Shown here: positions 29,301 to 54,421 of the stretch, one piece after another
How the letters are laid out: each line of letters starts with the position of its first letter
How positions within the stretch are numbered: position 1 is the first letter of the stretch
Virus record (IMG/VR): IMGVR_UViG_3300044974_001280
Coordinates: 62,001-126,000 of that record
DNA length: 64,000 nt
Direction: 5' to 3' (one strand)
Position numbers and translations under genes: made by a program
Notes under the pieces: generated by a model
The model's input: only the letters and a program-made list of their open reading frames with translations
Databases searched by the model: none
Told to the model about the DNA's origin: nothing

Positions 29301-30056
29301 AGATCTATCTCAGGAACTTATGTTGATGAATTTTCCACTGTTTCTTTGGATAGTTCAACGGTCCAATCTCCTCTTGTTTTTTCAGTCTATCCAAATTTAG
29401 ATCTGTTCCTAGCAGGTTCCGTAACAGGTCAAACCGGACCAACTGGACTTCCATATCCCCCTCTGGATGGATTTCCTTTTGTTTCTTTTTCTGAGAGCTA
29501 TAAGGCACCCAAAGGGATAGATCTAGGTAACATTATTTCTAGAGCTGGGTCCGGAGCTTGGACCTGGGCCGATGTTCATAATTCAGAGAGAGATTTATAC
29601 GTGCCCATGCTTTCCACTGTTTTCTTTTCAAACTACGGATCCCAAATTTTCGGAAAACAAAATAACAGATGGGTGCTGACCGACGCCAGAAATGGGAATG
29701 TTATTCTGGATGTTAAATTCACCCCTTATTTTATTTACACCTTTACCTCCTCGGGCTACTACAGTTTACAAAACACTGTTGAAGATGCTGCCGGCAACAT
29801 TTACGAAATTTCAAAACCTGCTTTCATCAAGGTTGTAAACCAATCAATTCCTAGAGCCGATGACCCTAACCCTTTGCTGGTAAATTCCGCCGACTATGGA
29901 TACATTAAACCCTCCAAAGAATTACAAAACCAGATTTGGGAACTCAATCAGGATCTTCTAGAAGAACAGATAGTTATCAGAAGAGAAAGCGCCATTCCTT
30001 TTGGCTCGGGACTGGTCATTAAAAGTGATGCTAATTCAACTTTTAGGGAAACCTAA
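26388..30056 (+). CDS. tail/baseplate-associated beta-propeller protein (Reg_prop-like blades, C-terminal PKD-like)
   Basis: YFNSSNSVVPDN, VYSISFDENGNYWLGTDSGLTYWDG, FNTGNSALPSDRV are two-component-regulator-propeller-type blades; YTFTSSGYYSLQNTVEDAAGN is PKD-like. Confidence 0.6.
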   Translation: MAFYILEAATDSAENIWAVGRDLSLFNGQDWEYFNSSNSVVPDNSPYYLDTRTISIDEYDVKWVGCAIAPSTSQVLVFSVANTDAATGSNWTLSDFNLPPGGLWEVGEIYASPYGDEVLAYITGLNGGAGTGATCTPGITGGYLWRYNKVLQEWSEVAPGYIWPTIYEIAAKGLDGVNWEYYLATSDGLQIIPPGTLDYEVLQDGTFFLPGLKKLNPYNSSVPTSQVYSISFDENGNYWLGTDSGLTYWDGKKFYNWTVPLNNSVTKVTSRPYGHVFFRCGDPFFDLSLSDGFFHFNGDSFSQFNTGNSALPSDRVVDLLLVHNKVEKNGLSVYPNDLWVVNGNNVTLFDYNLPHVYASSNYTGTTGWNFLYYTPGSTGATTDAANLPKTQRYDWVYPSWQGYDNQKIVLNHPGMDPRSLFLTTNFKDLANGQAENQNYWNWGSVPTYDQSLTAGRIPSSDWVVGITGSSSPFLTQPSISLTATTRYSHLNVVGGFMIGENAYLGASSNTEDFVLQNTNDTSFFPGNEFMGFLSFYTDGGQVQGAIPFRGANTKILDVKRSFDGKTVYALGIYNYFLEAGKFTWGSSYPTAGGMSVTGVTGPTGGPIGFSNMASPGATSDYSYPWILNAPTSATSGLYIPDFSVVNDTTAFFIAEIDYEIGNQISYGGIDFSSETASEVFCLKKFRYFPGASSDYDTQTGGPTGYFPSGVNYPGTASLAVGENSIRIMGNIQGGFATLARDYENILDAPSCPSFFFSSISGGSYTNSSFVLELNEDFSLRGVQTIGMTGPNSYTDTISTVPNAQTFLLSGTSTSDVSYGNLNLTHPNPGFCFPWILLSLPSFTGITGSFISNHTSNGSSFPSWRPTIGTFSSDSSYYAGFIYTGNAITTSGSTSLTFEGASGALSVGLLSISPGGIVRQESSYEILPSSYQAVDSSFLSGVQGLSTGDSYYLSVFYPTVPGVTGGGNHIFKRSISGTYVDEFSTVSLDSSTVQSPLVFSVYPNLDLFLAGSVTGQTGPTGLPYPPLDGFPFVSFSESYKAPKGIDLGNIISRAGSGAWTWADVHNSERDLYVPMLSTVFFSNYGSQIFGKQNNRWVLTDARNGNVILDVKFTPYFIYTFTSSGYYSLQNTVEDAAGNIYEISKPAFIKVVNQSIPRADDPNPLLVNSADYGYIKPSKELQNQIWELNQDLLEEQIVIRRESAIPFGSGLVIKSDANSTFRET

Positions 30057-30757
30057 AATTTTCCTTTGTTACTTCCGGTTCCTCCAGTTCCCCGGTACTT
30101 CCATTCCTCGTATCTTTTGACGATTTCTTTTAGAATTTTACTTCTGACGATGTCATCATCTGTAAAGACGAATTCTCCTACCCCCTCTACATCTCTTACC
30201 ATATCTACGAACATGGGCAAAGCAACTTTCTCGTATGAGATGTCGTGCTGAGTTACGTCCCCTGCTAGTAGAACTTTAGAATCGTTGCCCAGTCTAGAAA
30301 CATAAAGCATGAGTTGCTTCATATCACAATTTTGAGCCTCATCCAGAATCATCATGGATTTATCAAAGGTTGCTCCCCTGAGATAGGCTAGAGGTCTAAA
30401 TTCAATCTGCTTTTCAATGAAAAGCTGAGCTAATTTTTCTTTGGAAATGATTTTTTCCATGGTGATCAGAAAACTTTCCATGTAGGGACCTATTTTATCG
30501 TTGACGTCTCCTGGTAAAGAACCTAGTTTTTCCCCTGATTCCTGGATCGGCTTAGTGAAAATAATTCTTTCAATCTCAGATTTCTGTAAAAGCTTCAAGG
30601 CTGTGTAACAGGCAGAAAATGTTTTAGAAGTTCCTGCAGGTCCCCAACAAAAGGTTATGGTGTTGTGGATGATGGTGTCAGAGTAGAGTTTTTGCTTAGG
30701 AGAAAGAGAAATATCTCTAAAATCTTTGTTAACGAGTTTTGATTTTCCGATGGGCAT
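30053..30757 (-). CDS. phoH: PhoH-like ATPase
   Basis: GPAGTSKT Walker A, EKLGSLPGD, PLAYLRGATF, ILDEAQN, SRLG, GDVTQHD. Confidence 0.95.
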   Translation of the reverse strand: MPIGKSKLVNKDFRDISLSPKQKLYSDTIIHNTITFCWGPAGTSKTFSACYTALKLLQKSEIERIIFTKPIQESGEKLGSLPGDVNDKIGPYMESFLITMEKIISKEKLAQLFIEKQIEFRPLAYLRGATFDKSMMILDEAQNCDMKQLMLYVSRLGNDSKVLLAGDVTQHDISYEKVALPMFVDMVRDVEGVGEFVFTDDDIVRSKILKEIVKRYEEWKYRGTGGTGSNKGKF

Positions 30758-33965: not shown

Positions 33966-36900
33966 ATGGCAGGTACTCAAAATAGTGTCAGTTCTCTGGT
34001 AGCTCAGTTTCTTAGGCTCCAGAAAAACTCGATTGAAATCATCAATGGTCTTAACGAGGTTGCAACCTCCACTAACGACACAGTTCAAATAGAAATGTTG
34101 GACGAGGCTGGATTTCCCAGCAACGTTTCAATTCCGGCCTATGGTTATTTAAGGAGCCAGATCCAGAGACTAGATTCCAACATTCAGTCCTTGGCTGGGC
34201 TTGGCGATAATTTCTCAACGGTCAGAAACCCTGATGGGACTTATTCACAAATCTACAAATCAGAACCTCTCAGAGATCCAACCCCTCTGGTAAACTTACA
34301 AGTACCCAGCACTTTTTCTGCCAGGGACAACTGGTTTTTTGAAAGTTTTCTTTCTCCTTTACTCTACATCAGTCTGGACGTAACTGGGCAAATACCCGAT
34401 GACGCAGATCGAATTTTGGTGAAGAGAATCATCGCCAACACCGACACGGATGATAAAAAAGCCTATTTTGACACCAATCTGAAAGGAAGAAATGAAATTT
34501 CAGAACAAAATTTTATTTCAGAACTCACCGGAGCAGGCATCAATTATTTTGTGGACGAGGACATAATTCCACTGCCTCTTCGCACTATTAGAAATCAGGG
34601 CTCGTTTGGGGTTCTTTCTTTTTACGATGACACTGTTAGTACAACAGATGCTAACGGTCAGACTGTACAAGAAACGAGAAGGAATTACAAACTTAACTCT
34701 GTTCAGTACACCGATACCAGTACGGGAGTTCAAAACGGTAGAACTTTAAATGTCGGGAATGTTTTATTAACCTCAGATGGCACTAGATACGAGATTACTT
34801 CTATTAACATCAGTCAAACTTCGGTCCAACTTAAAAGAATTTCTGGCTATCAGCCTGTTCAAATAGGTAATAACTCCTTGAGCCTATTGTCTACCCAGTT
34901 CAATGCACGATTTGTAGACGTCAACGTTGGTTACGATGAGAGGCAAGGTGTTTTCTTTAAAAAGATCGACGACAATTACAATATAGTTGCTTCTAACTGG
35001 TCCCCTGGCATTGTTTTTTTCAGCAATGAACTCAGAATCAATACCACCAGCGGGGTTCAGACTCTCGAACAATTTTATTTGACCTCGGTGGCAGATCTGG
35101 GGCAGCAGCTACTGGCGATGGCAAAAGAGAAAAAAATCTCGGCCGTGAGCGGCCTCGTGCCGGAACCCCCTAGTATTGTAAACAGTAATTTCAAAGTTGT
35201 TCAGATTAACACTCAGCTAACCCAAGGCACCGATATTCAAACTCTGAATCAAAAGGTGGCTTTAAAAGCAACCCTCCAAAGTGAAATAGCTCAGCTCGAT
35301 ACGGCGATCAACACCAATCGAGCACAGATTAATAGTTTGAGTACTACCTCTGTAACTCCATTCTCTAAGACTTCAGGCAACAGTTTAACATCCTCAATCG
35401 ATACCAGTCTGAGAACAACAACCCAAAATTCTCAAGCTCTAACAGCCAACCTAAACTCTTTAACCCAACAAAGAGTTCAAAAACAGCAACTGTTGGCTTC
35501 TGTTGTTAGCGACATTAACACCCTATCTACAAGTACCCCTCAACTAACTGTAGATCCAAAGTATAGGGTAAGGGGATTTTGGGCTATTCCTCCTCCCAGA
35601 ATCAATCCTTCGACAGGGTCTCAACAAGTTATCCAATTTATTATAGAATACCGTTATTTATCAGATTCTGGTATTTCTCCGGCTGTTCAACAAATTAATT
35701 TCCTAGATAACAACGGTCAACAGAAAACAGGCTCCTTTAGTAATTGGAACAGAGTTATTACAGACATAAGAACAAAAATTTATGATCCTAACACTGGCAC
35801 TTATACCTGGGCTCCTGAATTAACTGATGATGCAGATGCCAACAACATTAACCAATTGGATATTCCTATCACCAGCGGAGAACAAGTGGAAATTAGAATT
35901 AAATCAGTTTCAGAGGCAGGATGGCCAGACAACCCCTTAACTTCCGACTGGTCAGATAGTGTTATCATCGGATTTCCTGCCGATGCCAGCACCCAAAACA
36001 CGGCTGCTGCGGTAACAACTAATTTAAAAGACGAGGCTGTTTTGGCAATCCAACAGGATTTGTCTTCTAAAGGTCTAGACAATCTGTTGTCAAGACAGTT
36101 CACTGCTGGATCAAAAGTTTTTGTTTTGGATACTCCTGCAATTGCAAGTGGATTTTACGACTCGAACGGAAATCCAGTCGACTTGTTTCAGAAATTAACA
36201 GATCTCCAGAATGAGATCGTTTCACTAAGAGCAACGATTGAAAGAAGTGTTGGCGTTCTTGAGGTTCAAATTGTAGATTCTGCAGGAAACAGCCAAATTA
36301 TTACAAGTGGGCAAACTATCAAACTTAATGCAGGTTACACTAACCAAATTTTTACTAGTCCTCTTACTTCTGATGCAGGAAAAATCGCTTCTTCTATTTA
36401 TCAGCTTAAATTGATTAACACAGCAGCTGGAATTCTAGAACTTTCTTCGGTTGTGCCAGGTGGACTTAACACAGTTGCTGGCTCTTCTACAACTTACTCT
36501 CTGCCAGAAGGTTACAATCAGAGTCTGAGGTACGGTGAAATTGGTATTTCTATTACATCACTAACTCCAGCCGATATTATTCCTCCTGGATCTACCGGCA
36601 ACGCCAACGATGAGTCTTTCCAGCAGCTTAGACAAGCTGCCCCTTATATGTCGGGTAACGCCAACAGCCAGTTTATTTACCCCAGATGGAAAAGTGTCGG
36701 TCTAGATCAGGATCTGTATGTTAGCACGCAGCCCTATTCAGCGGGTTACAATTACCAAGGAAATGGCCAGGGTCTACCACAGAATGGCTCATCCTTGATT
36801 CCCTATGACCCTTCCGTGTCCACTGTCCCTACAGCTTCAGGCACAGGTCCGGCGGTTTGGAATGGTAATTATACTGGCTCTACGGGTAGTTATGCGGGAG

Positions 36901-37541
36901 TTGGCGGTGGCTATCTGAGCGAATTTTGTATTCATAAAGATCACCCAGCTTTGGTGACAGGTCAAACTTTTACTAATTTAGTTAAACCCAATTTTGCCGG
37001 TGGTGTGGTAGTGTACCCGGCCTTCAGACAATCCGATTATTTCTATTATGATGCGAATCTACCCAACTACTGGAAGCAGATTTCATACAGTCCGGTTACA
37101 GATGATTTTGTACAGGGACCTACTGCTACTAGAGAAGATTCTATGTTTCCTTTAAAGTGGGGTTTTGAAAGTTCTGATGAATGGCTGATTGGCAGATATA
37201 GTTGTGGCTCTTATTTCTTTTTAGGTCCCGTAACTTCATCCGTAGTTCAGGTTCAAGGTTCAACTTCTTTGGCATTCCAGCCAGTCCAGCAGGGTTCAAA
37301 TAATGCCATTATTATCCCTATTATCTTTCAATTTAGGACAACTGATAAGTTAGGTTATATTGGTGGATTTAGGGCAGATGGTAATCCAACCAATATTGTT
37401 TATACAAAAAAAATGGGCATTGATATTCAGGTAAAAAATCAAAGTCCTTTTTCTTTCGATCTAGAAGCGACAGGAAAATACAAGAATGACACCCTTTCTT
37501 CTCCTAATTTCTCTTCGCAAGGTGGTTTGAACGTTGGATAA
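33966..37541 (+). CDS. large virion structural protein with coiled coils and FN3-like segment
   Basis: 1191 aa; heptad segments; VEIRIKSVSEAG...SDWS is an FN3-like C-terminal strand. Confidence 0.55.
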   Translation: MAGTQNSVSSLVAQFLRLQKNSIEIINGLNEVATSTNDTVQIEMLDEAGFPSNVSIPAYGYLRSQIQRLDSNIQSLAGLGDNFSTVRNPDGTYSQIYKSEPLRDPTPLVNLQVPSTFSARDNWFFESFLSPLLYISLDVTGQIPDDADRILVKRIIANTDTDDKKAYFDTNLKGRNEISEQNFISELTGAGINYFVDEDIIPLPLRTIRNQGSFGVLSFYDDTVSTTDANGQTVQETRRNYKLNSVQYTDTSTGVQNGRTLNVGNVLLTSDGTRYEITSINISQTSVQLKRISGYQPVQIGNNSLSLLSTQFNARFVDVNVGYDERQGVFFKKIDDNYNIVASNWSPGIVFFSNELRINTTSGVQTLEQFYLTSVADLGQQLLAMAKEKKISAVSGLVPEPPSIVNSNFKVVQINTQLTQGTDIQTLNQKVALKATLQSEIAQLDTAINTNRAQINSLSTTSVTPFSKTSGNSLTSSIDTSLRTTTQNSQALTANLNSLTQQRVQKQQLLASVVSDINTLSTSTPQLTVDPKYRVRGFWAIPPPRINPSTGSQQVIQFIIEYRYLSDSGISPAVQQINFLDNNGQQKTGSFSNWNRVITDIRTKIYDPNTGTYTWAPELTDDADANNINQLDIPITSGEQVEIRIKSVSEAGWPDNPLTSDWSDSVIIGFPADASTQNTAAAVTTNLKDEAVLAIQQDLSSKGLDNLLSRQFTAGSKVFVLDTPAIASGFYDSNGNPVDLFQKLTDLQNEIVSLRATIERSVGVLEVQIVDSAGNSQIITSGQTIKLNAGYTNQIFTSPLTSDAGKIASSIYQLKLINTAAGILELSSVVPGGLNTVAGSSTTYSLPEGYNQSLRYGEIGISITSLTPADIIPPGSTGNANDESFQQLRQAAPYMSGNANSQFIYPRWKSVGLDQDLYVSTQPYSAGYNYQGNGQGLPQNGSSLIPYDPSVSTVPTASGTGPAVWNGNYTGSTGSYAGVGGGYLSEFCIHKDHPALVTGQTFTNLVKPNFAGGVVVYPAFRQSDYFYYDANLPNYWKQISYSPVTDDFVQGPTATREDSMFPLKWGFESSDEWLIGRYSCGSYFFLGPVTSSVVQVQGSTSLAFQPVQQGSNNAIIIPIIFQFRTTDKLGYIGGFRADGNPTNIVYTKKMGIDIQVKNQSPFSFDLEATGKYKNDTLSSPNFSSQGGLNVG

Positions 37542-37544
37542 ATA
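37537..37544 (+). promoter_or_regulatory. putative late promoter GATAAATA
   Basis: Overlaps the upstream stop, 47 nt before the giant ORF. Confidence 0.5.
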
Positions 37545-37590
37545 GAGAGTAGATTAAACAGAATGATAGAGTTACTAAACCAGAATCTAA

Positions 37591-40500
37591 ATGCCAAATT
37601 GTTATAATTACTTAGTAAGTCAGGTAGGTTTACAAGCAGCAACTTATGATTACCAAGATTGTGTTGATGGGTCAACCGAACAACTTAATGTGGGAGCGGG
37701 TGCAACCGCTTCAATTTGTGCTATAGAAAATTCTGTTTTATTTATTATTGGTGAAGAAGGTGGGGTCTCACAAGAAAGCTCTTGTGGTTCGATTACCCCA
37801 ACTCCCACCCCCTCTATTACTCCCACCCCTACGCCTACACCATCGGTAACGAGTACCGTGACTCCAACCCCTACTCCAACTCCGTGTCTTACTTCGGCTC
37901 CTTGTTATGTCTATGAATATGAAAATTTCGACAATTTTTCAGTTGATCTAGAAAGTTGTTCCTGCCGACAGGAAGTTCTAAGCTTTGGACCTGACCAAGG
38001 ACTTACAGGGGGAACAGGATCTTTTGGTTTTTTTATAGGGGTAGCCCAGCCTGAAGTAAAAGGAGGAACGGCCGATTTCATCGGATCCACGGGACCCATT
38101 CAGAACAGTGTTGTCCCCGAAGATGCATGTTACTGCATGCAAGTTGTTAACATCTCTTACACCCAAACAGGATTTATTTCTTATACGGGTTGTAACAATC
38201 TGACAATATCAACGACGCTCAGCCCTAGAACAAGGATTCAGGTTTGTTATAAGGGGATCAATGCTGCTTTTAATGTAATTCCTGTCCCTGGATATAATTC
38301 AGGTTGTTGGAATACCGTAGTAGGATGTTCCCCAGGGGGTTTTTGTGGTTTTGAATGTAGATGTTATGAGTACAACAACACAACGGGAAATACTATTGCT
38401 GTCAATTATATTGATTGTGAAGGTGCAGTTCAAGCCATTGATCTTTCCACAGGTGATTCGGGAAGGTTGTGTGCCCGGGCAATTGTAGATAACGTTTCTA
38501 TTTTTACTAATGCCACTACTTGCGGATACAACAATTCTGCTCCTCTTTGTACAGGAGGAGTCTGTCCTACTCCTACTCCTACCCCAACCCCCACCCAGAC
38601 TCCTACCAACACTCAGACCCCCACCAATACTCAGACCCCCACCAATACTCAGACCCCTACCAACACCCCGACTCCTACCAACACCCAGACTCCTACCAAC
38701 ACTCAGACCCCCACCAATACTCAGACCCCTACCAACACCCCGACTCCTACCAGCACCCAGACTCCTACCAACACTCAGACTCCTACCAACACTCAGACTC
38801 CTACCAACACTCCAACCTCGAGCGTTACCCCTACCAACACCCAGACTCCTACCAACACCCAGACCCCTACCAACACCCAGACCCCTACCAACACCCAGAC
38901 TCCTACCAACACCCAGACCCCCACCAATACTCAGACCCCTACCAACACCCAGACTCCTACCAACACCCAGACTCCTACCAACACCCAGACTCCTACCAAC
39001 ACCCAGACTCCTAACTCAACCCCTTCTCAAACACCTAGCGTTACGCCCAGCGTAACTCCTACTGTTACCCCTACCAACACCCAGACCCCTACCAACACCC
39101 AGACCCCCACCAATACTCAGACCCCTACCAACACCCAGACTCCTACCAACACCCAGACCCCTACCAACACCCAGACTCCTACCAAAACTCCAACAAACAC
39201 CCCCACAAAAACCCCTAATAACACACCATCACAAACACCAAGCGTCACCCCAACCAATTCACCCACCCCTTCAAATACTCCAACTGTTTCTCCTTCCCCT
39301 GCCGGATCCACTGGATGTCCTCCTCAAGACATTTCTTGGAGTTTTTGGAATTTAAATAATATATTTGATAGGGTAGGTAGATTTTATGAAAATAACAATA
39401 CGGGGAACAGTCAGATTGCCACTGTTACCGTTTCGTCCACTCAACCCAACACTTCCTATTATAATGTTACAAATACCCCATATTTTGCTTTACTTTGTCC
39501 TAAAAATCCCCAGCTGACTGAAGCTTTGGGCCTGAATGTAAATCAGGTAACGGGAACGGAAGTATACACTTTCACTTTCGATAGACCAGTTACGGATCCT
39601 TCTCTAGCAATTTACTCTCTTGGAAGTGGAGGAACAACGGGAGTTGCTCAATTCACCAGTAACTTAGAAATTGTCTGTGTTCTGCAGGACCCAACCCTCT
39701 CTTTCCCATTAACTAAAACTGGTCCTAACGAAGTAACGGGAAATGAAAGTTTTGGAACTATTTATTTTCCAGGTACTCACACATCTATAAGTGTATCGAT
39801 AACTAATGCAATGGCTGTTAATTTCGTTTGGGGTATTTGCACTCAGGAACCCCCACCTTGTGAAGTTGATCTGATTATTGCATACGACATTTCAGTTTCA
39901 GCTGGCACTAACACCCCATACAATGGATCAATCATTGCAGAAAGACTAGTTTCTCTCCAGATAGTCAATAATTTTATCAATGAAATAAATTCGGGTAAAG
40001 TAAGAGTTGCAGCTTATTCTTGGTCAGATGTGTCTCCTGACCCCCAAATTCAGCCTTCTCTGAACAGTTTGCAGTTTTCATCTAATTATAACCAGATCTA
40101 TAATTATTTCTGCCAACAGTCGGTTTCTTATCCTTCCTGTCTGGACTATTCAGGGGTTTCTTTTCCTGGTGGTACCAATCCAGGATTGGGGATTAATACA
40201 GCTATTAGCCTGGCAACTTCCTATGGTAGACCCAATGCCAAGAAAGTTCTTGTTTTAATAGTTGATGGAAATCCGAGTACAAATCCTAGTTCACCTAATG
40301 CTTATCTTTTACAGCAAGCTACACTTTTCAAACAGTTGTCTCTTTATGGCATGCCTGGAACTTCAGAGATAGTTGTCATTGGAGTTGGTGGGAATTCTGA
40401 TGATCCAAATTTTACTGCTTGTTCGGTTAGCATTTCAGGAATTCCTACAGATTTGTGCTATTCATCTGCCTTATATTCCCAAGTTGCTTCCAATGACCCA

Positions 40501-43500
40501 ATCACAGGGAATCCAATGATGATCAACCTGGTGGGTCCAGGCCCAGGTCCTTCTTCCATCCAAAGTCTTTATAACAATACCCCAGGCCTACAAACTATTT
40601 ACAACGCCGCTCTTCAAGCTACTAATTTTATCTGCCCCAATAGCCCCTGTACTCAGGCTAATCTTTTCGTCAATGGGGATTTTCAAAATTCTGTAGCTTC
40701 CCAAACGGGTGGTTCTGTAGTAGGTTGGTCCCTTAGCAACGTGGATGTTAGAAGCATTAGATCAGCTTATTTTCCTAATTTCTTTGGCCCGAATTCAGAC
40801 AACGTCTTTATTAATTTATCCTCCTGTGCAGCCTTTGGGACCGTTCAACAAGCTTTAACACTCACTCCTGGTACTGTCTATATTTTAAGTTATAACATTG
40901 GCGCTAATAAACAAAATCTTGCTGACAATTCTTCGAGAACTGTTCAGGTTAGACTAAATGGGACTTTGTTATCCACTAATAACATACTCCCTAGTGCAGT
41001 AATCGGGACTACTTCCAATAACCCTTTCTTTGATTTTGGATGGGAAACTAAATCTGTTATTTTTACTGCTACCCAAATTTCAAATACTATCCAATTTAGG
41101 GGAAGCTCTCCAAATACTTGTTTCGGACCGGTTTTAGATAATGTTTGCTTGGTTGAGTCCAGTGCTTATCCAGTTCCATCCCCCACTCAGACTCCCTCAC
41201 AAACACCAACTCCCAGCATAACCCCGACAAACACCCCAACTCCTTCTACCACACCAATCATTTGTAATTGCTATAATTACTATAATGATAATGATCCGTG
41301 TCCACTTCCTGTAGTTGCCTGGTCCACTAAGCCTCTATCTGATCTGGGCCCTGGCGATTTTATTTATAACACCCCGAATTTAGCAGATCCTTTTAGCAAC
41401 TCTGCCAATTCTTTTTATGCTTTTGGACAGGACCCGTGTGATTTAGAGCCCCGCTGGCTTTTGCTAGGAACTGCATCGTCGGGACAAATTTCACTGTCTG
41501 GTGTTTGTGATGTTACCCCAACTCCAACCCCCTCCTCAACTCCAACCCCAACTCCTTCCGTATCTGACAATTTAGGAGTGTATACGGTGTTCATGAATAT
41601 CGAAGGGGCTTCGAGTGAGTCTTTTTCAGGAGAACCTGAAATACCAGGACCTACTCAAACCGCTAGTTCAACCCCAACCCCGAGTATCACCGCTTCTCCA
41701 ACCCCAACTTCGAGCGAGACCCCAACTCTAACTCCAACCCCAACGGAGACTGGAACCCCGACTCCAACCCCAAGTGAAACTGCTACTCAAACTCCAACCC
41801 CGAGCGAAACTGGTACCCCGACTCCAACTCCAACTAATAGTTTAACCCCTTCTGAATCTGCAACTCCTTCTCCAACCCCTACCCCAACGGTTACCCCTAC
41901 TGTATCCCCTACTCTTTCTCCTGTTGGTACTTGGTATCCCTTATACGGTAGGGGTAACGGGTACATCACTAGCCAACAAGCCTGTGATGCACATCTAATA
42001 GGTGAGCCTTGCGAGGTTTCATATGCCGATTGCGATCCCTCGGTAAATTTTGTTTCATTTTCTGTGCTTCCGGGGGAAAGTGGAACTTTCTGTGCCCAGT
42101 GGATAGTTTCAGATCCTTGTGATATAGTTTCACAGCAAGGAGGATGCACCAATCCTGGAGGAACTGGGTATATTTGCGCACCTCCTCCTACCCCTACTTT
42201 AACTTCTACTAGTCCTGCCCCTTGTTGTATAACTGCTAATAAATTCATTTCTCCACCCTTTCCTAATAACGTTTTTCCTAGTACAAGTTGGTTGTATAGA
42301 TCAATTAATTGGAATGGTGTTACTATTACAGCTTCAACTACAACACCTAATGCACTGAGAATCGCGGCACCCGAACCTACTTACGGTTGCGACATTCAGC
42401 AAATTATTTTCGATTCCTATAATAACAAATATTCAGGATTGATCGATACTTTCTACTCTTCGCCGGTTAATGCTAATTATACCCTGAATTTCAGCCAACC
42501 AATTTCTACAATTACTTTAAGGATTTTGTACCTTAGTGTAGATGAAAACAGTAATTCAGAGTTTATCTATTTTACAACAAACACTGGAACTCCTAGTCTA
42601 GAACCAGTTATTTGGTGCGGTGATAGATCAAGTTTTGAAATAGGAACCAATGTAAACGGTAGCTATATAAAAAATCTCTTAACAACCGTTCCTGGCAATT
42701 ATGACGATGAGGTTTCTCTGGTTGTGGAAATTAAGAACCCCTTGGGCTTCTCAAGCCTAACCTTAACTAATGTTTGGCCACCTAATCCAGGCAGCAGCAG
42801 TCCAGCGGGAGTTGGTTTTGATATTTGTGAGTGCTCAAACCCTACTGCCACTGTAACCCCGAGTGTCACCCCTACTAACACCCCGACACCTAGTATCACT
42901 CCTACTAACTCCCCAACCCCTAGCATTACTCCTTCTATTAGTGTAACACCGAGCGTCACCCCTACTAACACCCCGACTCCGAGTATCACTCCTACTAACA
43001 CCCCGACCCCGAGTATCACTCCTACTAACACCCCGACCCCGAGTATCACTCCTACTAATACTCCGACCCCTAGTACCACCCCTACCAACACACCAACCCC
43101 GAGTATCACCCCTACCAACACACCAACCCCGAGTATCACCCCTACTAGCACCCCGACCCCGAGTGTTACCCCGAGTGTTACCCCTACTCCTATTATTTAC
43201 GATTGTATCAGATGGTGTATCGCAAACACAAATTCGTATCCCGTTACTATCACTGTTACCAGATGCGATGGCACTTCACAACCTTTTTCCCTTTCTGCTT
43301 TTTCTGAAATCTGCAATATCTGCCTCAGAAATGTGACCACCATTGCGGGTGTTATAGCAACCGATACAGGTAGACTTTGCACTTTCTTACCCAAACTTTT
43401 TGATTACAATTCTTCCTTTGGAGTTCTAAGAACAAATCCAAAATTAACAGGAAATGTGAAATTAACACTGGACTCTAATGGTTCAGTTTGGATGAATTCA

Positions 43501-46500
43501 ATGGATGCAAATCCAGTTCTTAGCGATCAAAGATTCAAAAAATACCGAGTTTCGGGACAAAACGCCTATTCTAAAGATCTGTACAGATTCTTCATGAACG
43601 GAACCGTGCCAGAAAATGTTATTTTTGAAGTTGCAAAACTTACTGATGGGGAGGACCGGCCAGTGGAAGGCTTTAGCTCTCAGTACGATTTCTTCTATGG
43701 CTCTGGTGCCTCTACACTTGTTGATAGAAATTACAACGAGAATTTCCGGTACTTCCAGCCATTGTGGTTGCGGGATGAGATTCCAGATTTCTTTGTCATC
43801 TTTAAAATCCCGGGGCCTTTGAGTTATCCGTATTCGACAAACCAAACCGAAATTCTGAGCGGGACCCAGTACAAAATTATTCAAGACGTCAATTCACCTG
43901 ATCCTTTTGTCATCTCTTATGGGGTTGATAATTTTGCCCGGCCTATTTTGTATAGGGCTGGAGAATTTATGGTTGGAAATTCTGTTTACTCAACCTACGA
44001 AATTGTATCAGGATCTGGTAAAGTTGTGCTAATGAACGAGACTCTTTTCCAGCCTGAAGTTGATGACGTTAATTCATACTTCAACAGTAAAATCCTTCCA
44101 AACGCGGCTGCTATAGCAACTTTTGATCTTCGAGAGGACACCGTTATAGGTAAATATATTAGATCTATCATTAACGATCCTGGATTTTCTTCAGCTCCTT
44201 TGGATTTCTCCTATCAGCTTAATGCCTTTACTTACTACCAAGGAGTAGATATCAAAACAGGTAGTTATAGTAAAAAAGGGGAGTTGATGTACGATTTCTT
44301 GATTTCCAACAACTCCACCCCCCAGATAGATTTCGAGAATTATGTGACAGGAGGTTTTGAGAGAAATGGGATCATAATTCCCAATTTATTGAATTTAGAA
44401 TTTCTCTTTAATGATCCTGATTCTGATTTATATTCCATCAACAGATATTTTGGTCTGTATGTTTCCAGAAATGATTTAGGAAGTTTTAAATTGAATGGAG
44501 ATTTCTTCTATCAATATCGTAACCTGTCCGGCAACAACAATCTACCTAAACCTTCCACCAATAATGTCGGATATGCTAGTAGTACTGACCCTAATTATTT
44601 GAGTAGCACGACCGGAGTCAGACTTTTCTATCAAGAGGCAAATTCTTGGATTCCTGGCTCCTATGATGTAAATGTTTTAGAGCCACAGAAGCTTTTCTAT
44701 ATCACCGATAAAAACGACAAATTTTATTCCCTCCTCAGAAATGAAAATTACGATTCCACCACCCAAACTTGGTCCAACAACACCCCGGTAAGTGGTCAAT
44801 TCGGACCTCTTTTGCCTTCTGGTAATTTCGGAACTGAGTCGAATATGGAAATGAAATCCGGTAATTTAGTTGTGTTCAATAGGCAACTAAATCTACTTGA
44901 TTTTACCGGCCCCAATGAAAGAATAGGTGGTTTTTCGGGTTTTTTACCTGAATCTTCCGGTCACGCCAACATTAATATCCAGTTTTTATCAACTTTTAAT
45001 AGCAGTACTCCAGTTACCTTCAAGATCATTTGGCCGAATGGAACTAGAGGACCTTTAAATGAAAAATACGACCTGATTCAATCTTCCTTATTGGGAGGCA
45101 GCGTTCTCAATTGGCAGGCTGGAAGTTCTTATAACAACGGCAACACCCACTATTTCAATTTCTCTCAGGGCCAAACGTCCCAAGTCGCATCTTCGTTTGT
45201 TCAATGTGTTCTCTCCATCAGCAGCACTATCTGGGATTCTGCTAATTCTGACAATAACGCTATCATTAGAGCCAGAAACAGCGGAGCGAATTACAACACA
45301 GATTTTAAGATTGCAGTCTTTTCTGACTATGATTCTTTTGAGTCTTCTTATGCCGGAATTTGGTCCAGCACGGCCGGCTATTCCGCAGGTCAAATTGTCT
45401 CCTATTTTAATGTCTACTACACAGCTTCTTCTGCCATTACAGCCCCAAGTTCCGGCAACACGAATCCTCCTCCTACGGAGGATAACACTTGGCAAAATTA
45501 CTTCACCTTTACAACTTCAGGTCTGATTAAAATTGAGAACTATGACGTTTCAGCTTTAGATAGAAATCTGAATTTCGTTGGTGGTACTGATTTCTCTAAA
45601 TCTAGAGTTGCCTTTTCAATCAACGAGAAAGATAAAATTACCCCTGGCAAATGGATCGAAGTGGAAGGAGGTAGGGGAGTGGTAGGTTCCGTTTCTAGAA
45701 TTTCCTCGGTTACCAGATACGTCGACCGTCCAATCTACAATAATAATCCCTCCTTGACTTCGGGCACCGTGACTGAATTCAGGGGCTACAATGAATTTTT
45801 GGTCGCAAGTTTGGAAGATACTAAAGCTATTATCAGCCTGGGTAGTGATGGCAATTTCAATGTTTGGGATGTAGCTACTCTCTACTCAGGTGCTTTCAGT
45901 TTCTTCGATCTGAAAGATTTTGACTACGATTTTCTATCCTCTAAATACGGAGAAACACCAACCCCTGAATTCCATCGATATTTCCAACTTGTTCCTGATC
46001 AACCTGGTCAAATCGTAGAGGGTGTAAAATACATCGTAAGGAGTGGTGAAATACTGGTTGATAAAGGTTCACCCACGGAGAGGATTTTAGGCCCAGGCTC
46101 TGCCTTTATTGGCACTACGGTCAACTATTTCCAGGATATATTATTCTCTGAAACTGGAACTCTTTCTGTCGTGTATCCAGCAGTTTTCAGCCAGGTTGGT
46201 TGGGTAGACCCTCAGACCCCCTACCCTACAACAATTGTCCCCGAGCAAAATCTGAACTCGTTTGAGGGTTTTTACGGAATTCAATCCATCTCTAACGAAA
46301 TGCCGATCCCAAATCCTCTTGAAAAGGCAGAGTTATTTGAATATGGTAAGCTTGAAACAGAATACCAGTATCTCTGGGAAAACTTCACCCAGACCCGGGC
46401 CAATTTTTCTAGAATAGTGCCTTTCGTGAACAAATGGGGATTCTTAGGTGGCACCGACGCCAGGGGCAATGTTTACAGACTGAATTCTTCTCCTGCATTC

Positions 46501-48927
46501 AGCCCCACCAATTTTTCCCCTAGTTTTCAGAAAGAAAGCCCAGATCCTCGATATCTGACCCACGAGTGGTTGATTCTTCAGGGGGTTCCTCCTCAGTTCC
46601 CAATTGATGATATTTCAAAACAGAAAAGTTATCTGCCGGGCGAGGTTGATTTTCAGAAATTGCGTAGTGGCAATCCTAATTACGCCCTGTACTTTAATTC
46701 ATTCTTTACTGTCTCAACCGCAGATTATCCAGCTCCCTACTACAGCCTGAAATATCAGGGGTACGAATACTTTAGCAACCTCAATTTCAATTATGCCACC
46801 GGTTTTTATGAAACGGTCTTTAGGGGAGTAAAGATAGTACTGAAGAAAAGAAGCAGTGTTACGAACCCCAAATCAGAGCTTGAAAAATACATTATCAACT
46901 ACAGAGGGTATGAAAATTACAATTTCTCTGCCATCCTCAAAGTTGTGCCGGAGGATGATTCTGAAATCCAAAGTCCAGTTAGGTATGAGTTTATTGAAAA
47001 CGTGCAACAAAAATGTGTCCTCTTGGTAGTGTACGTCGTCATTAAAGATTACAGAGCTTTACCTTTGGGGTCGACTGGAGGAACTGGAGGAACACCCTAC
47101 CTGGATTATCTGCTGATGTATTGCATGAGTGACAAGAAAGAGGCCACGGACGTTGGAACAACAGGAGCTACGGGTCCTACTGGATCACCTCTCTACGATA
47201 TTGCTGATATCAAGTTGTCTGCGGCCTTGAATCTCTCCACTACTTCAGACAGTTCAGTTACTCTATTTTCTAATTCTGGAAAAATCTTCACCATTGAAAA
47301 TCCAGATTTTGACACCGATTTAAGAGAAGAGATCAATTTGTTTTACCCAATAGGATCTACCGGGTCCGTCTCCGATACCGGACCTGGTAGTTTCTACGTC
47401 CCCAGTCAGTCTTACACTTACCCCTGGCCAGTTGGAAGATCCCAAAATTTAGTTGATTTTCAAGCTATCGAGCCAGGAGCCTATGAATTCCAAATTCCCT
47501 TTGCGTTCTCCTCGCCAGTTACAATCCCAGTAGGACCAAGATCAGCCTACGCTAATTATCCAGTTTTTCAAGTAGACGGGGGAGAAGATTATTTCGACTT
47601 TATTCTAAAAAGAATTTCCCTATCCCAAATTTATTTGCGTGTTAATAACGAAAGCCCCTATATTAGTTATACTACTTACGATTGGGATCCGATTGCTGAA
47701 AGTACCCTGGTTTCTCAGAATTCTTTTCAAGTTTCTTTTACTGAGCCAACTGCTCTCTATAAACCAACTGGCTTATATCCAGTCAAGAGCTACGAAGGGC
47801 CTCAAACTCTAGGCACTAGTGTTGTTACCAGTTATCAGATTGAAAACGGTGGTTCCGAGCTGGCCAGTGATATTTTAAGGTATGGAGGCGCATACGAACC
47901 TTTGTTTAAGAAGGTGCTCAGATTCAAGGGTGATAAAACGGATTCAATCTCCGGCAACCCAGGGGCAGACATTACTTTCAGAAACTGTACCTTTGCCCCC
48001 GAGCAAGAAGGATTTGGTCTCATAGAAAATCTGGCTTTTTCTAAAGTCTCTCTGGATCAAAATATTCTTCAGGCTTCTCAGAATTTGCCACAAGGACCGG
48101 TGTTTCCTTTAGTGGGTCAATCACCAATTTCCTACAAGAATTTCTCAGTCTTCCTTTCCAGCTGGGATCCTGGCTACTACAATCTTTGGACCTCGGCTAC
48201 AACCCAGAATCCAGTTGCCGGAACTAGATCGATGAAGGAGAACAAAAGTTTTCTGGGTTCAAAGATGATGCAGACCCCCTACACTGTTACCATCTACACT
48301 TTCATCACTCTAGAACTGGTGAGAACATCAGGCAACACCAATGTCGATGCGATTAACACTCAGGCGGTTGCCGCGGTTCCTGCCATTCAAAATTTAAACC
48401 CCTCCACTTCTAACACTGGGGTAGGACAATTAGGAAATTATCTCAGTAATGTTGATTTACCCGTTTTCGATCAAGACATCTTCCCCCAAGTGGAAATCTT
48501 CTGGCAAAGGAACGAAATTTCCAACACCGTCATCGGTTCTATCAGATTGGATAGGATCTTAAGAAGGTATCTGTTAAATTCCGGGGTTAGCCAGGTTTTC
48601 GTCGACAACATGGTGAGCGAGTTTGGATTGGGGAATCCCAACAGCATCTACGACGATATCAACACCTACATTGACCAGAATATAGTTCCTATCTACGAAG
48701 GGATTACTTTTGATCTGTTTGTCAAGAAGACAGGAGAGGCGTTAACAACAACTGAATTATTGGTAAGAGGAGATCTTATTAATCCAGATCGGATCAGATA
48801 TGGTTACTATCAACAAAATAACTACAGATTAACTAAAATCACCGATTTGATTTACTCTTTCGAATATCCTCTAACGGTCGGTCAAAATTATTCCTTGACT
48901 TTCTCCTTCAGAATCCAGAAAATTTAA
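37591..48927 (+). CDS. giant modular adhesin/tail-fibre-like structural protein
   Basis: 3778 aa: repeated Cys modules (CYxY..YxDC..C), Thr/Pro linkers, vWA domain (DISVS MIDAS, GGTN, LIVDG; about 39865-40635), DUF642/CBM-like domain (NLFVNGDF...FGPVLDNV; about 40657-41160), CBM5/12-like [15 protein letters not shown] (45361-45495), non-repetitive C-terminal ~1840 aa from about 43396. Confidence 0.75.
38566..39300 (+). repeat. 18-bp coding tandem repeat, mucin-like (TPTNTQ)n
   Basis: ACTCCTACCAACACCCAG-type units repeated more than 25 times with synonymous variation and interruptions. Confidence 0.95.
42856..43191 (+). repeat. 30-bp coding tandem repeat ([10 protein letters not shown])n
   Basis: CCTACTAACACCCCGACCCCGAGTATCACT-type units recurring with period 30. 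Confidence 0.9.
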
Positions 48928-48941
48928 TTTTTAAGAGTCTG

Positions 48942-48949
48942 AATATATA
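48942..48949 (+). promoter_or_regulatory. putative late promoter variant AATATATA
   Basis: GAATATATACAG 19 nt before ATG 48968; the same 12-mer occurs at 53312 and 6039. Confidence 0.5.
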
Positions 48950-48967
48950 CAGAAAGACATTCTTCCC

Positions 48968-50452
48968 ATGCCTACTTTGAACATTCTTAATCTAAATCTG
49001 GGGGATTCCCAAGAAGATATCAGGAACAAGGTTAATGCAAACTTTGAGTCCTTGATCCAAAATGGAGGTGGACCCCAAGGTCTGCAAGGAGAGATTGGAC
49101 CTCAAGGTCCAGTAGGTCCTCAGGGACCTCAGGGTGATCCTGGTCAGCAAGGACTGAGGGGAACTCGTTGGTATGTTCAACCCTCGTTTCCGGCGGGTGG
49201 AACTTCCGATCCCGTAATTGAAGGTGATTATTGGGTAGACACTTTCAATCAGAATTCTATTTTTGAGTACACTGCAGCAGGATGGACAGATACAGGGTTC
49301 GATCTTCAATCCACGGAGGTCTTTACTACTTTAGTCGGAATTTCAGGCCCGAGTGGTTCTAAGAATGCGGTCGTTTTCAACTCCCCTTTTCCTAATTTAA
49401 ACACCCTAGTTTTAAGCGATGCGGTGTCGGTGCCCCAAACCACCAATCCCACCTATGCGAAACTTCTGATCTCAACCAACTCGTCCTCTGATTACCCTCT
49501 CCTGGAATTTTCGAAAACCAACGCCACTGGAGCTGGTACACCACAGGACTACAACAGACACCCACAATTTAGGTGGTTAAACCCCAGCTCTTCCAACTAT
49601 AATTTGCTGTTTACTGTTCCTCAAGACAGCATGGAATTCAGAGCAGGAGGCTCGATGCTAGTTCAAAGCTCCGCCTCTTCCCTTCAGTTTTCTTCAGCCA
49701 ATACTTTGTCTTTAACCTCGGCTGCAACTATGACTGTTACCTCGGCCTCGGTCATGAATTTTTCATCAGGTTCCCAGCCGATGAATTTCAGTTCTCAGAA
49801 CTACAATCTTTCATCATCCTCTTTGAGTTTATCTGTGCCTCTGAGTTTGACCTCCAGTGCAAGTGGCTATGCCATGACTTTTAACAACTCCGGTTCAGGA
49901 TCAGGTCTCTTGTTATCAGGAACATCGACCAGCACTAGTCAGTTTTTGGCCAATTTTGCCTCAGGGGGATCCAGTAAATTCTCAGTTAGGGCGGATGGAA
50001 AGATTTTCGTGTCTCAATTAGGATCTGCTTTTAGATCTCTTTCCTCTACCTATGATAATTCTGCGACTATCTCCGCCACAACTTACTATTATTGGTATTT
50101 GGGAACAAATATTATCCAGACTGGAAACCTTCTTCTTTTCGATACTTCTTCCTCTCCTTCAGATAAGGGACTAGCCCTTCCTGTCGGGGGTACCGTCTCT
50201 AATAGCTGGACTCAGTATCTAGGAAATTATGAATCTATCCAATTAAGAGTTATTAGTACAAACTCGAACAATTTGGTCAAAAGTGTTGCTTTGTGGACAG
50301 GCTCAGGAACCATTAATGCGGGTTCTAACACGGCGGCTACTTTTGCCAGTGGTCAAAGTTTTGTCGATTTCACCATCATTAGGCTCTCTTCCGATACTGA
50401 TTATCAAGTTTATTATTCAACCTGTGGTGGACTCTGCGGTAAATTAGCATAA
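48968..50452 (+). CDS. tail fibre-like protein with short collagen segment
   Basis: LGDSQEDIRNKVNANF attachment motif, (Gly-X-Y) run GPQGLQGEIGPQGPVGPQGPQGDPGQQGLRG, Ser-rich beta region. Confidence 0.7.
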   Translation: MPTLNILNLNLGDSQEDIRNKVNANFESLIQNGGGPQGLQGEIGPQGPVGPQGPQGDPGQQGLRGTRWYVQPSFPAGGTSDPVIEGDYWVDTFNQNSIFEYTAAGWTDTGFDLQSTEVFTTLVGISGPSGSKNAVVFNSPFPNLNTLVLSDAVSVPQTTNPTYAKLLISTNSSSDYPLLEFSKTNATGAGTPQDYNRHPQFRWLNPSSSNYNLLFTVPQDSMEFRAGGSMLVQSSASSLQFSSANTLSLTSAATMTVTSASVMNFSSGSQPMNFSSQNYNLSSSSLSLSVPLSLTSSASGYAMTFNNSGSGSGLLLSGTSTSTSQFLANFASGGSSKFSVRADGKIFVSQLGSAFRSLSSTYDNSATISATTYYYWYLGTNIIQTGNLLLFDTSSSPSDKGLALPVGGTVSNSWTQYLGNYESIQLRVISTNSNNLVKSVALWTGSGTINAGSNTAATFASGQSFVDFTIIRLSSDTDYQVYYSTCGGLCGKLA

Positions 50453-50453
50453 C

Positions 50454-52562: not shown

Positions 52563-52571
52563 TTTTTTGTT

Positions 52572-53285: not shown

Positions 53286-53312
53286 CCCCGTAGTTCGTTT
53301 TTTTCTGGACCG

Positions 53313-53320
53313 AATATATA
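53313..53320 (+). promoter_or_regulatory. putative late promoter variant AATATATA
   Basis: 22 nt before ATG 53342. Confidence 0.5.
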
Positions 53321-53341
53321 CAGAGGATTTAAATTTTTTTT

Positions 53342-54407: not shown

Positions 54408-54410
54408 ATA
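54403..54410 (+). promoter_or_regulatory. putative late promoter GATAAATA
   Basis: 12 nt before ATG 54422. Confidence 0.5.
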
Positions 54411-54421
54411 TAATAATCTAC

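What the first reader, a model, noticed from the sequence alone, without database searches (positions are those of the whole stretch)
37591..43400. 1900-aa eukaryote-style adhesin (mucin linkers, disulfide modules, vWA, CBM-like) grafted onto a phage structural protein
Seen: the N-terminal half is beads-on-a-string, with at least 5 Cys modules (CYxY..YxxC..C), two related beta-sandwiches (YTFTFDRPV / YTLNFSQPI), a vWA domain with intact DxSxS, a DUF642-like domain and several Thr/Pro stalks. It switches abruptly at about 43396 ([22 protein letters not shown]) to non-repetitive sequence. Many paired Cys in a cytoplasmically assembled virion imply post-lysis oxidation or a dedicated oxidase. Inference: a long flexible capture filament with slippage-tunable reach.
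Basis: partly seen in the sequence, partly recalled or inferred. Interest (0 to 1): 0.6.

Follow-up and report, generated by a model that had tools for sequence, protein, structure and literature searches.

The report
Giant phage protein with fused adhesin arm
A lake-water jumbo phage makes one 3,778-residue protein. A conserved protein from its tail-gene block carries an extra 1,935-residue, linker-separated string of binding-type domains, which close relatives lack or encode as a separate neighbouring gene.

Summary

- **N-terminal arm, aa 1-1934.** It holds six related Cys modules plus a seventh partial one, a confident beta-sandwich, a vWA domain with DxSxS/GGT/DG, a DUF642 CBM-like jelly roll, a second all-new module, and six Thr/Pro linkers totalling 596 aa. 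60 of the 64 Cys lie here.
- **Core, from aa ~1935.** 73 of 79 IMG/VR loci have no extension.
- **How the graft arose.** In one relative, Cys modules, sandwich and vWA form a separate gene, followed by a DUF642-linker-core gene. Here, and in a second lineage (L097), they form one frame, under purifying selection (dN/dS 0.12-0.23).
- **Assembly.** Five independent assemblies agree. One has four more TPTNTQ units.
- **Not supported.** 'Eukaryote-style' origin, a dedicated oxidase (only a WCGPC thioredoxin was found), and kinship of the two sandwiches.
- **Untested.** Virion location and binding.

Best reading: a long flexible adhesin arm on a tail-module protein. This is a new variant of phage surface-displayed binding domains.

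The parts
37591..48927 (+). Whole ORF, 3,778 aa (P0001): N-terminal adhesin-like arm plus conserved core.
   Evidence: It is identical in IMG/VR contig L013/L079.
37591..37767 (+). Cys module m1 (aa 1-59).
37768..37908 (+). Thr/Pro linker 1 (aa 60-106).
37909..38547 (+). Cys modules m2-m4 (aa 107-319). All 18 Cys of aa 99-326 are conserved in relative P0123 at 55% identity. m4 is modelled at pLDDT 86-91.
38548..39324 (+). Thr/Pro linker 2 (aa 320-578). It contains the 18-bp array 38581-39185 (about 30 TPTNTQ units). One assembly (L014) has 72 nt more, starting at 39117.
39325..39849 (+). Beta-sandwich 1 (aa 579-753), all-beta, pLDDT 84-96. Conserved motif TFTFSxPVTxPxLAIxSLG ... FPGTHTSI.
39859..40650 (+). 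vWA domain (aa ~757-1020) with MIDAS residues D765/S767/S769, T861 and D892.
   Evidence: The model is poor here.
40651..41154 (+). DUF642 / CBM-like jelly roll (aa 1021-1188). Its first residues ([10 protein letters not shown]) correspond to the start codon region of a separate gene in relatives L004 and L006, so this is the fusion joint.
41155..41268 (+). Thr/Pro linker 3 (aa 1189-1226).
41269..41490 (+). Module m6 (aa 1227-1300). It shares only the CxCYxY start with the Cys modules; the fold is unknown.
41491..41934 (+). Linkers 4 and 5 (aa 1301-1448) around a 20-aa island ([11 protein letters not shown]...) that is also present in the linker of P0009. Holds the 30-bp array 41657-41828.
41935..42228 (+). 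Cys module m7 region (aa 1449-1546).
42229..42831 (+). It has no family hit. Language-model features resemble secreted actinobacterial ~200-aa proteins, which is a lead only.
42832..43203 (+). Thr/Pro linker 6 (aa 1748-1871), with the 30-bp array 42856-43172.
43204..43392 (+). Cys module m9 (aa 1872-1934), directly abutting the core. It is 93% identical in L097 (dN/dS 0.04).
43393..48927 (+). Conserved core (aa 1935-3778), the family of ~1,840-aa jumbo-phage proteins (phrog_31887). It starts with the invariant [15 protein letters not shown] motif.
45340..45507 (+). CBM5/12-like (chitin-binding-type) subdomain inside the core (aa ~2584-2639).
   Evidence: Pfam 17.4 bits against a cut-off of 26.2. 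VIA Z 5-5.8, 28-33% identity.
33966..37541 (+). Conserved upstream partner gene (1,191 aa, phrog_29329). It always directly precedes the core or the adhesin gene in relatives.

Best explanation
The gene encodes a conserved large protein of the tail/baseplate-fibre gene block of a Bacteroidota-type jumbo phage. Its N-terminus has been extended, in frame, by an accessory adhesin gene.

Shown:
- The core family normally starts at the [15 protein letters not shown] motif.
- In one relative lineage the Cys modules, beta-sandwich and vWA form a stand-alone gene just upstream of a DUF642-linker-core gene.
- In this phage and a sister lineage the stop and start between them are gone, and more modules lie between DUF642 and the core.
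- The modules are under purifying selection but evolve far faster than the core.
- Linker arrays change length.

Inferred:
- Each copy of the core in the virion carries a flexible arm. Taking roughly 0.25-0.3 nm per linker residue, my own figure and not a tool result, 596 linker residues plus about twelve small domains could reach on the order of 150-200 nm.
- The vWA metal site, the CBM-like jelly roll and the other modules would make weak, multivalent first contacts with polysaccharide or protein on the host envelope or its slime. This would raise the encounter rate before the ordinary fibres commit.
- The Cys-rich modules most likely become rigid by oxidation once the virion is released into oxic lake water, since no phage oxidase was found.
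For: - One frame, in five IMG/VR assemblies and in Logan contigs of four runs.
- It is the only Thr/Pro-linker ORF in the 230-kb genome, and depth is even across pieces.
- Core homologues are ~1,840 aa and start at the switch. 73 of 79 IMG/VR loci have at most 23 aa before it.
- Synteny of 737-aa gene, 1,191-aa gene, core and collagen-like fibre genes is kept in P0003's contig and in the 462-kb phage LR756500.
- A baseplate wedge gene lies upstream and tail-fibre-like genes lie downstream.
- Split state in relatives: L006 (1,192-aa gene | P0123 | 70-nt gap | DUF642-linker...) and L004 (stop TAA, 2 nt, ATG in another frame).
- Second fused lineage: L097 is collinear, with modules 61-76% and core 91% identical.
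- dN/dS is 0.12-0.23 for modules against 0.03 for the core.
- Domain identities: DUF642/CBM fold and vWA with MIDAS.
- All 18 Cys of m2-m4 are conserved at 55% identity.
- Length variation of linkers.
- Relatives of this clade (PTm1/PTm5) carry hair-like fibres, and such decorations are proposed to aid attachment (PMC13282480, PMC7824862).
Against: - No evidence here that the core is in the virion. The 1,200-aa model has no PDB match at E<=1e-3, and the best VIA hit (Z 8.5) is only a common decoration domain. Profile searches of PDB sequences are blank.
- In PTm1 the homologue lies near neck and portal genes, not near tail fibres, so the site on the particle is open.
- No ligand is known for any module.
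- The vWA model is of low confidence, and the Pfam score is just below cut-off.
- Disulfides are assumed. CxC/CxxC patterns could bind metal instead.
- The +72-nt allele comes from short-read assemblies, which can miscount repeats.
- Polarity (fusion or fission) is not resolved.
Confidence: 0.55

Rival explanations
1. Assembly artefact or two genes: the N-terminal half is wrongly joined to the core through shared Thr/Pro repeats, or is a separate gene hidden by a sequencing error.
For: Logan short-read contigs do not bridge 38621-39156 or 43008-43116. Other contigs in the same lakes enter identical Thr/Pro words from different flanks (loose ends). In relatives L006 and L004 the adhesin part really is a separate gene.
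Against: - IMG/VR contigs from other samples span everything. L013/L079 are identical over 20.7 kb, L014/L015 differ only by 72 nt in-frame, and L035 runs from 38706 to 55007 at 100% identity.
- L097, a diverged lineage, keeps one frame of at least 3,656 aa in the same order.
- The vWA-DUF642 joint lies inside identical contigs of three runs.
- No other Thr/Pro gene exists in the genome.
- dN/dS is below 0.25 throughout.
Confidence: 0.03
2. The arm is real and on the virion, but it serves to stick to non-host material such as algal or cyanobacterial mucilage, particles or biofilm matrix. This would hold the phage where hosts live (a Hoc/mucus-type strategy) rather than bind the host directly.
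For: CBM-like and vWA domains are generic matrix binders. A CBM5/12-like chitin-binding-type subdomain sits in the core itself. Other family members insert different surface-type domains (Fib_succ_major, DUF285) at the N-terminus or at internal hot spots. Most relatives manage without the arm, so it is accessory.
Against: Nothing distinguishes the two targets with these data. Fast evolution of the modules (61-76% against 91% for the core) fits an arms race with a host surface at least as well.
Confidence: 0.25
3. The arm has no binding role. It is a steric or hydrodynamic 'hair' (anti-aggregation, protection from grazers or enzymes, altered diffusion), or an assembly aid removed by proteolysis before the virion matures.
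For: Almost a third of the arm is low-complexity linker. Jumbo phages process many structural proteins, as stated in review PMC13282480. No ligand is known.
Against: Folded modules are conserved under purifying selection with all Cys kept. MIDAS residues are intact. Domains of this kind are binding domains wherever they have been studied. No protease site was tested.
Confidence: 0.1
4. The conserved Cys do not form disulfides. They coordinate metal ions (zinc-knuckle-like), so the modules fold in the reducing cytoplasm without any oxidation step.
For: CxC and CxxC spacings occur in m2, m3, m4, m6 and m9. The protein is made in the cytoplasm. No oxidase gene was found.
Against: Cys counts per module are mostly even (4, 4, 6, 8, 6). 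There are no accompanying conserved His. The modules are beta-rich, like extracellular disulfide domains. None of this is decisive.
Confidence: 0.25

Closest known systems
Uncharacterised ~1,000-1,850-aa proteins of Bacteroidota-type jumbo and huge phages (phrog_31887; Tenacibaculum phage PTm1 ORF-295 BBI90687.1, PTm5, pT24, Lak phages, LR756500)
   Same: The core aa 1935-3778 is homologous. There are at least 237 word-search hits at 46-70% identity, tblastn hits, BFVD fold hits at E 1e-16 to 9e-51, and the same neighbours.
   Different: These start at the KLFDYNSSF motif. None carries the 1,935-aa arm, and the longest other member found is 2,393 aa. Their function is unknown.
Displayed accessory binding domains on phage virions (T4 Hoc and the Ig-like/CBM decorations of tail and head proteins) and the hair-like fibres of 'hairy' jumbo phages (PTm1, CBB, Y3, Atu_ph07)
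   Same: An accessory, dispensable, surface-type binding module is added to a structural protein. The proposed role is to enhance attachment (PMC7824862, PMC13282480).
   Different: Here there are about twelve unlike modules in series on Thr/Pro linkers, very rich in Cys, on one polypeptide. The genes for the hairs of the cited phages are not assigned to this family by any result here.
Bacterial modular surface adhesins and glycanases with Pro/Thr linkers (CBM-linker-domain architecture; choice-of-anchor C/DUF642; BatB-type vWA)
   Same: Same domain types and the same beads-on-a-string layout.
   Different: No signal peptide or cell anchor. The 'anchor' is a phage protein. The Cys modules and beta-sandwich 1 have no named family.
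P0123 / P0009 gene pair of a related lake phage (L006, L004)
   Same: Cys modules m2-m4 are 50-55% identical, sandwich plus vWA 34-42%, DUF642 45%, and the core 68%. The position after the 1,191-aa gene is the same.
   Different: These are two genes (stop, 2-70 nt, new start). P0123 ends in DUF285 repeats in L006. There are no m6-m9 modules between DUF642 and the core.

Membership tests
von Willebrand factor A domain (PF00092) | Score at or above Pfam's gathering threshold | tested here: inconclusive
   23.0 bits against a cut-off of 23.8 for aa 745-1025. The homologous domain of P0123 carries a precomputed PF00092 hit. The 3-sequence profile hits collagen VI alpha-3 at E 5e-4 and BatB 3ibs at E 1.3e-3.
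von Willebrand factor A domain (PF00092) | MIDAS residues DxSxS ... T ... D | tested here: met
   D765-I-S767-V-S769, T861 in GGTN, and D892 in LIVDG. DxSxS and DG align to the BatB motifs.
von Willebrand factor A domain (PF00092) | Alpha/beta Rossmann-like fold | tested here: inconclusive
   The model has pLDDT below 50 over aa 754-1021. Helices and strands alternate, but no fold match was obtained.
DUF642 (PF04862) / CBM-type beta-jelly roll | Pfam gathering threshold, and a jelly-roll fold covering the domain | tested here: met
   33.9 bits against a cut-off of 27. VIA Z 13.8 (rmsd 2.6, 130 aligned) to CBM61 2xom, and Z 12.8-13.5 to CBM4, CBM16 and CBM22, over model residues 1021-1190.
DUF642 (PF04862) / CBM-type beta-jelly roll | Binds carbohydrate | not testable with these tools
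   No ligand assay is possible. A shared fold does not show function.
Choice-of-anchor C (TIGR04362) | NCBIfam cut-off | tested here: not met
   55.3 bits against a cut-off of 120. Related, but not a member.
Eukaryotic mucin-type adhesin | Nearest relatives eukaryotic; O-glycosylated Ser/Thr/Pro tracts | tested here: not met
   135 hits in 1.84 billion representatives. All strong ones are unnamed metagenome or phage proteins. The one eukaryotic hit sums 11 weak vWA stretches. Glycosylation is not testable.
Phage tail-fibre / baseplate structural protein (for the core) | Lies in the structural gene block with conserved fibre-like neighbours | tested here: met
   A baseplate wedge gene (phrog_219) lies upstream and collagen-repeat tail-fibre-like genes lie downstream. 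The synteny is conserved in two relatives.
Phage tail-fibre / baseplate structural protein (for the core) | Sequence or fold match to a structural protein of known position | tested here: not met
   There is no PDB sequence hit and no Foldseek PDB hit at E<=1e-3. The best VIA hit, Z 8.5, is a generic insertion domain of sheath, nozzle and FliD proteins.
Phage tail-fibre / baseplate structural protein (for the core) | Detected in purified virions | not testable with these tools
   No proteome was available. The PTm1 paper (Kawato 2020) is not in the held library.
CBM5/12 chitin-binding module (PF02839), subdomain in the core | Pfam cut-off / fold match | tested here: inconclusive
   17.4 bits against a cut-off of 26.2. 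VIA Z 5.1-5.8 at 28-33% identity over about 46-51 residues. Family member P0072 has a precomputed PF02839 hit.

The most novel reading that the evidence does not exclude
The split and fused states are a natural 'Rosetta stone'. In relatives, the stand-alone adhesin protein (P0123-like) would dock non-covalently at the N-terminus of the core. The core family would then be the hitherto unidentified anchor of the hair-like appendages seen on PTm1-type jumbo phages. In this phage the hair has become a single polypeptide that could reach more than 150 nm (my estimate). Its Cys modules would stay soft in the reducing cell and lock by oxidation only after lysis, giving an adhesin that is armed by the environment.
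Probability: 0.15. Interest if true: 0.7.

Novelty: new variant of a known kind. Interest (0 to 1): 0.5.

Why it matters
Jumbo phages with hairs and extra fibres are known from micrographs, but the genes and the logic behind these appendages are mostly unassigned. This locus gives a concrete, widespread scaffold family: at least 326 IMG/VR stretches encode a relative. Its N-terminus and two internal sites accept foreign binding domains.

The locus also preserves three evolutionary states side by side: bare, with a neighbouring adhesin gene, and fused. That makes domain display on large phages experimentally approachable. It offers new Cys-rich modules and a beta-sandwich family without names. 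It also provides a natural case for asking how cytoplasm-made, Cys-rich extracellular-type domains mature on a virion.

Tried and rejected
- **Whole-protein Pfam scan.** It gave only a low-complexity 'Cementoin' hit and a weak VWA hit, so domain-wise scans were needed.
- **Word search with aa 574-1192.** Blank. The big representative search was then run and gave 135 hits.
- **tblastn of aa 98-1192 against 50,697 GenBank phages.** No match. Megablast of 19 kb: no match.
- **phmmer of the vWA against PDB.** Blank.
- **Kinship of the two sandwiches.** hhalign of the sandwich-1 profile against aa 1540-1750 gave probability 1.4%, so kinship is rejected as unsupported.
- **Fold of aa 1-1192.** Only m4, sandwich 1 and DUF642 are confident. 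m1-m3 and the vWA are not, so I make no fold claim for them.
- **Fold of core aa 1940-3139.** pLDDT 65.6, with no informative PDB match.
- **ESM Atlas feature searches.** Leads only: 0.86 for the Cys modules, 0.95 for m8.
- **Promoter and terminator scans.** Not above shuffles. There is no in-frame ATG near the core start that would give a short form.
- **Erv1 family search.** Uninformative, because its control was silent.
- **Joint 38590->41821 in two runs.** It has only 22 matching letters on one side and 26 foreign letters between, so I treat it as another Thr/Pro gene, not a deletion allele.
- **P0125/L007.** It shares sandwich 1 but sits in an unrelated context.

Full report
**What is there**

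The window is bases 62001-126000 of a 230,445-bp IMG/VR virus record, about 85% complete. Genes are tightly packed on one strand. They include a baseplate wedge homologue, collagen-repeat tail-fibre-like proteins, a gp32-type SSB, a primase and a helicase.

The helicase and the protein studied here are closest to the 462-kb phage LR756500, the Lak phages of Prevotella and Tenacibaculum phages PTm1/PTm5. I therefore infer a jumbo myovirus of a freshwater Bacteroidota host.

The finding lies in one ORF, 37591-48927 (+), of 3,778 aa (P0001).

**Anatomy of the N-terminal 1,934 aa**

- **Linkers.** Six Thr/Pro/Ser linkers total 596 aa and separate folded modules. At DNA level three of them are tandem arrays: 18 bp x 33.6, 30 bp x 5.7 and 30 bp x 10.6. 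Array 1 encodes about 30 TPTNTQ units, with up to four identical 18-mers in a row.
- **Cysteines.** 60 of 64 Cys lie in this half. The genome average is 1.08% Cys.
- **Cys modules.** Six modules of 65-75 aa share the pattern CxCYxY ... YxDC ... C(A/S). Pairwise BLAST gives m4-m7 E 8.6e-6 and m4-m9 E 0.009. An HMM built from them finds all six and nothing else in the genome. A seventh, m6, shares only the first motif.
- **Sandwich 1 (aa 579-753).** It is confidently all-beta, with pLDDT 84-96. It belongs to an unnamed family with the motif TFTFSxPVTxPxLAIxSLG...FPGTHTSI.
- **vWA (aa ~757-1020).** It misses Pfam's threshold by 0.8 bit. It has DISVS, GGT and VDG in the canonical places. As a three-sequence profile it hits collagen VI and the Bacteroides BatB vWA with those motifs aligned.
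- **DUF642 (aa 1021-1188).** It passes Pfam's threshold. Its model matches carbohydrate-binding jelly rolls at Z up to 13.8 over the whole domain.
- **Module m8 (aa 1547-1747).** It has no family.

**The switch**

From aa 1935 the sequence is a member of a large family. At least 237 word-search hits were found, nearly all 1,815-1,860 aa long and 46-70% identical over the full 1,839 aa. At least 326 IMG/VR stretches encode a relative.

P0003 (70% identical) begins four residues before the KLFDYNSSF motif. PTm1 ORF-295 and the LR756500 ORF match from their residues 3 and 8.

The 79 IMG/VR loci that were read break down as follows:
- 73 have 9-23 aa before the match.
- Two are cut off.
- The four extended ones are this same phage.

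Among proteins of 2,078-6,611 aa only six relatives exist, the longest 2,393 aa. The arm is therefore a rare addition. The family also accepts inserts at two internal sites, near aa 2390-2420 and aa 3186-3230.

**How the arm was acquired**

P0003's contig has exactly the window's gene order, but with a bare 1,849-aa core 30 nt after the 1,191-aa gene.

In L006 the same 1,192-aa gene (80% identical) is followed by:
- P0123, a separate 1,560-aa ORF with Cys modules (50-55% identical to aa 99-325, all 18 Cys kept), a long linker, a Cys module, sandwich 1, vWA and DUF285 repeats;
- then 70 nt of spacer;
- then a gene that starts with DUF642 and a Thr/Pro linker.

In L004 the upstream ORF ends just after the vWA. 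There is a TAA stop, 2 nt, and an ATG in another frame that opens P0009, which is DUF642, a linker and the core, 2,245 aa in all.

In the window the end of the vWA runs straight into [10 protein letters not shown], the counterpart of P0009's MSNLIINGDFQ. The window ORF therefore equals the two genes of the relatives joined at the start codon of the second, with m6-m9 added between DUF642 and the core. Whether fusion or fission came first is not resolved.

**Is it real?**

- Twenty lake-water runs hold at least 86% of the words of 37501-43500.
- Logan contigs of four runs are identical to the window. They bridge the upstream gene into the ORF, the vWA-DUF642 joint, and the last linker through m9 into the core. 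They break inside arrays 1 and 3.
- IMG/VR contigs from other samples close those gaps. L013/L079 (177 kb) are identical over 20.7 kb. L035 runs from 38706 to 55007 and L031 from 41678 to 55007, both at 100% identity.
- L014/L015 (150 kb) differ by one substitution and by 72 extra nt, four more TPTNTQ units.
- L097, a 202-kb contig of a different lineage, has the same fused order in one frame of at least 3,656 aa. Modules are 61-76% identical and the core is 91% identical. Linker 2 is 160 aa instead of 259 aa.
- Between the two lineages dN/dS is 0.12-0.23 for the modules, 0.04 for m9, 0.03 for the core and 0.02 for the upstream gene.
- No other ORF in the genome has Thr/Pro linkers.

Misassembly and pseudogene readings are therefore very unlikely.

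**What the core is**

Its role is inferred, not shown. It sits in the baseplate and fibre block, with conserved neighbours.

The model of aa 1940-3139 (pLDDT 65.6) has no PDB match at E<=1e-3. It matches only uncharacterised phage proteins in BFVD. The best VIA match (Z 8.5) is a decoration domain common to sheath, nozzle and flagellar cap proteins. That domain carries a small CBM5/12-like insert.

In PTm1 the homologue lies by the neck and portal genes. PTm1 is known for hair-like capsid fibres (PMC13282480, PMC7824862). This is a lead for where such proteins sit, nothing more.

**Redox question**

The genome encodes a classical WCGPC thioredoxin and a ribonucleotide reductase. It has no DsbA or glutaredoxin, and the Erv1 search was uninformative. 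No dedicated oxidase is evident.

Strict conservation and mostly even numbers of Cys fit disulfides formed after release. Metal binding is not excluded.

**Verdict**

The 'graft' is real and its origin can be traced to a neighbouring accessory gene.

The most likely function is a long, flexible, multivalent adhesin arm on a tail-module protein, with linker lengths that drift by repeat gain and loss. 'Eukaryote-style', a dedicated oxidase and sandwich kinship are not supported.

It is a new and extreme variant of the known practice of displaying binding domains on phage particles.

Noticed in passing
G000:C1:35507-37111 and 37117-38742 (outside the window): Two adjacent portal-protein paralogues. 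Both match the PTm1 portal, at E 3e-60 and 7e-53.
   Followed up: no
L012 = G000:C1:724-4878 (outside the window): A 1,384-aa ORF with 52 Cys (3.8%). It has no Pfam family and no copy of the arm's Cys module.
   Followed up: partly
window 16176-17339 and 17339-18730: An S1 RNA-binding-domain protein, and an amidoligase_2 plus pentapeptide-repeat protein, sit inside the structural gene block.
   Followed up: no
window 30053-30757 (-): A lone minus-strand gene in the block. Its counterpart in P0003's contig carries PhoH.
   Followed up: no
window 48968-50452 and 50454-52562: Two tail-fibre-like proteins with collagen-type repeats near the N-terminus. Their different C-terminal domains give weak DUF4082 and Lcl_C hits.
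   Followed up: no
Core family: P0268, P0041/P0048/P0055, P0099, P0269: Besides the N-terminus, the family has two internal insertion hot spots. Near aa 2390-2420 of P0001 there is a 110-aa insert in several members and a 550-aa Cys-rich insert with Fib_succ_major in P0268. A second site lies near aa 3186-3230. P0269 has a different 295-aa N-terminal extension.
   Followed up: partly
window 38566-38569, 41518-41844 and 42967-43001 (loose ends in runs X5, X8, X12, X13): Contigs in the same lake samples share Thr/Pro-coding words with the arrays but continue into unrelated sequence. Other Thr/Pro-linker genes or module variants therefore co-occur.
   Followed up: no
window 37591-38547 compared with L097: Synonymous divergence of m1-m4 (dS 0.57-0.76) is much lower than that of the core and the upstream gene (dS 1.7-1.8). 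This hints that the first modules were exchanged between the two lineages more recently. Sandwich 1 is the most diverged module at 39% identity, though my segment limits are approximate.
   Followed up: partly
L005:601-1095 (-) = near G000:C1:163000: A 164-aa ORF made almost entirely of Asp/Glu runs lies next to the thioredoxin gene.
   Followed up: no
L098 (JACCDW011427967.1): A third lineage. A 1,192-aa gene is followed by a stretch encoding Cys modules 49% identical to m2-m4, cut off by the end of the contig. Its state (split or fused) is unknown.
   Followed up: partly
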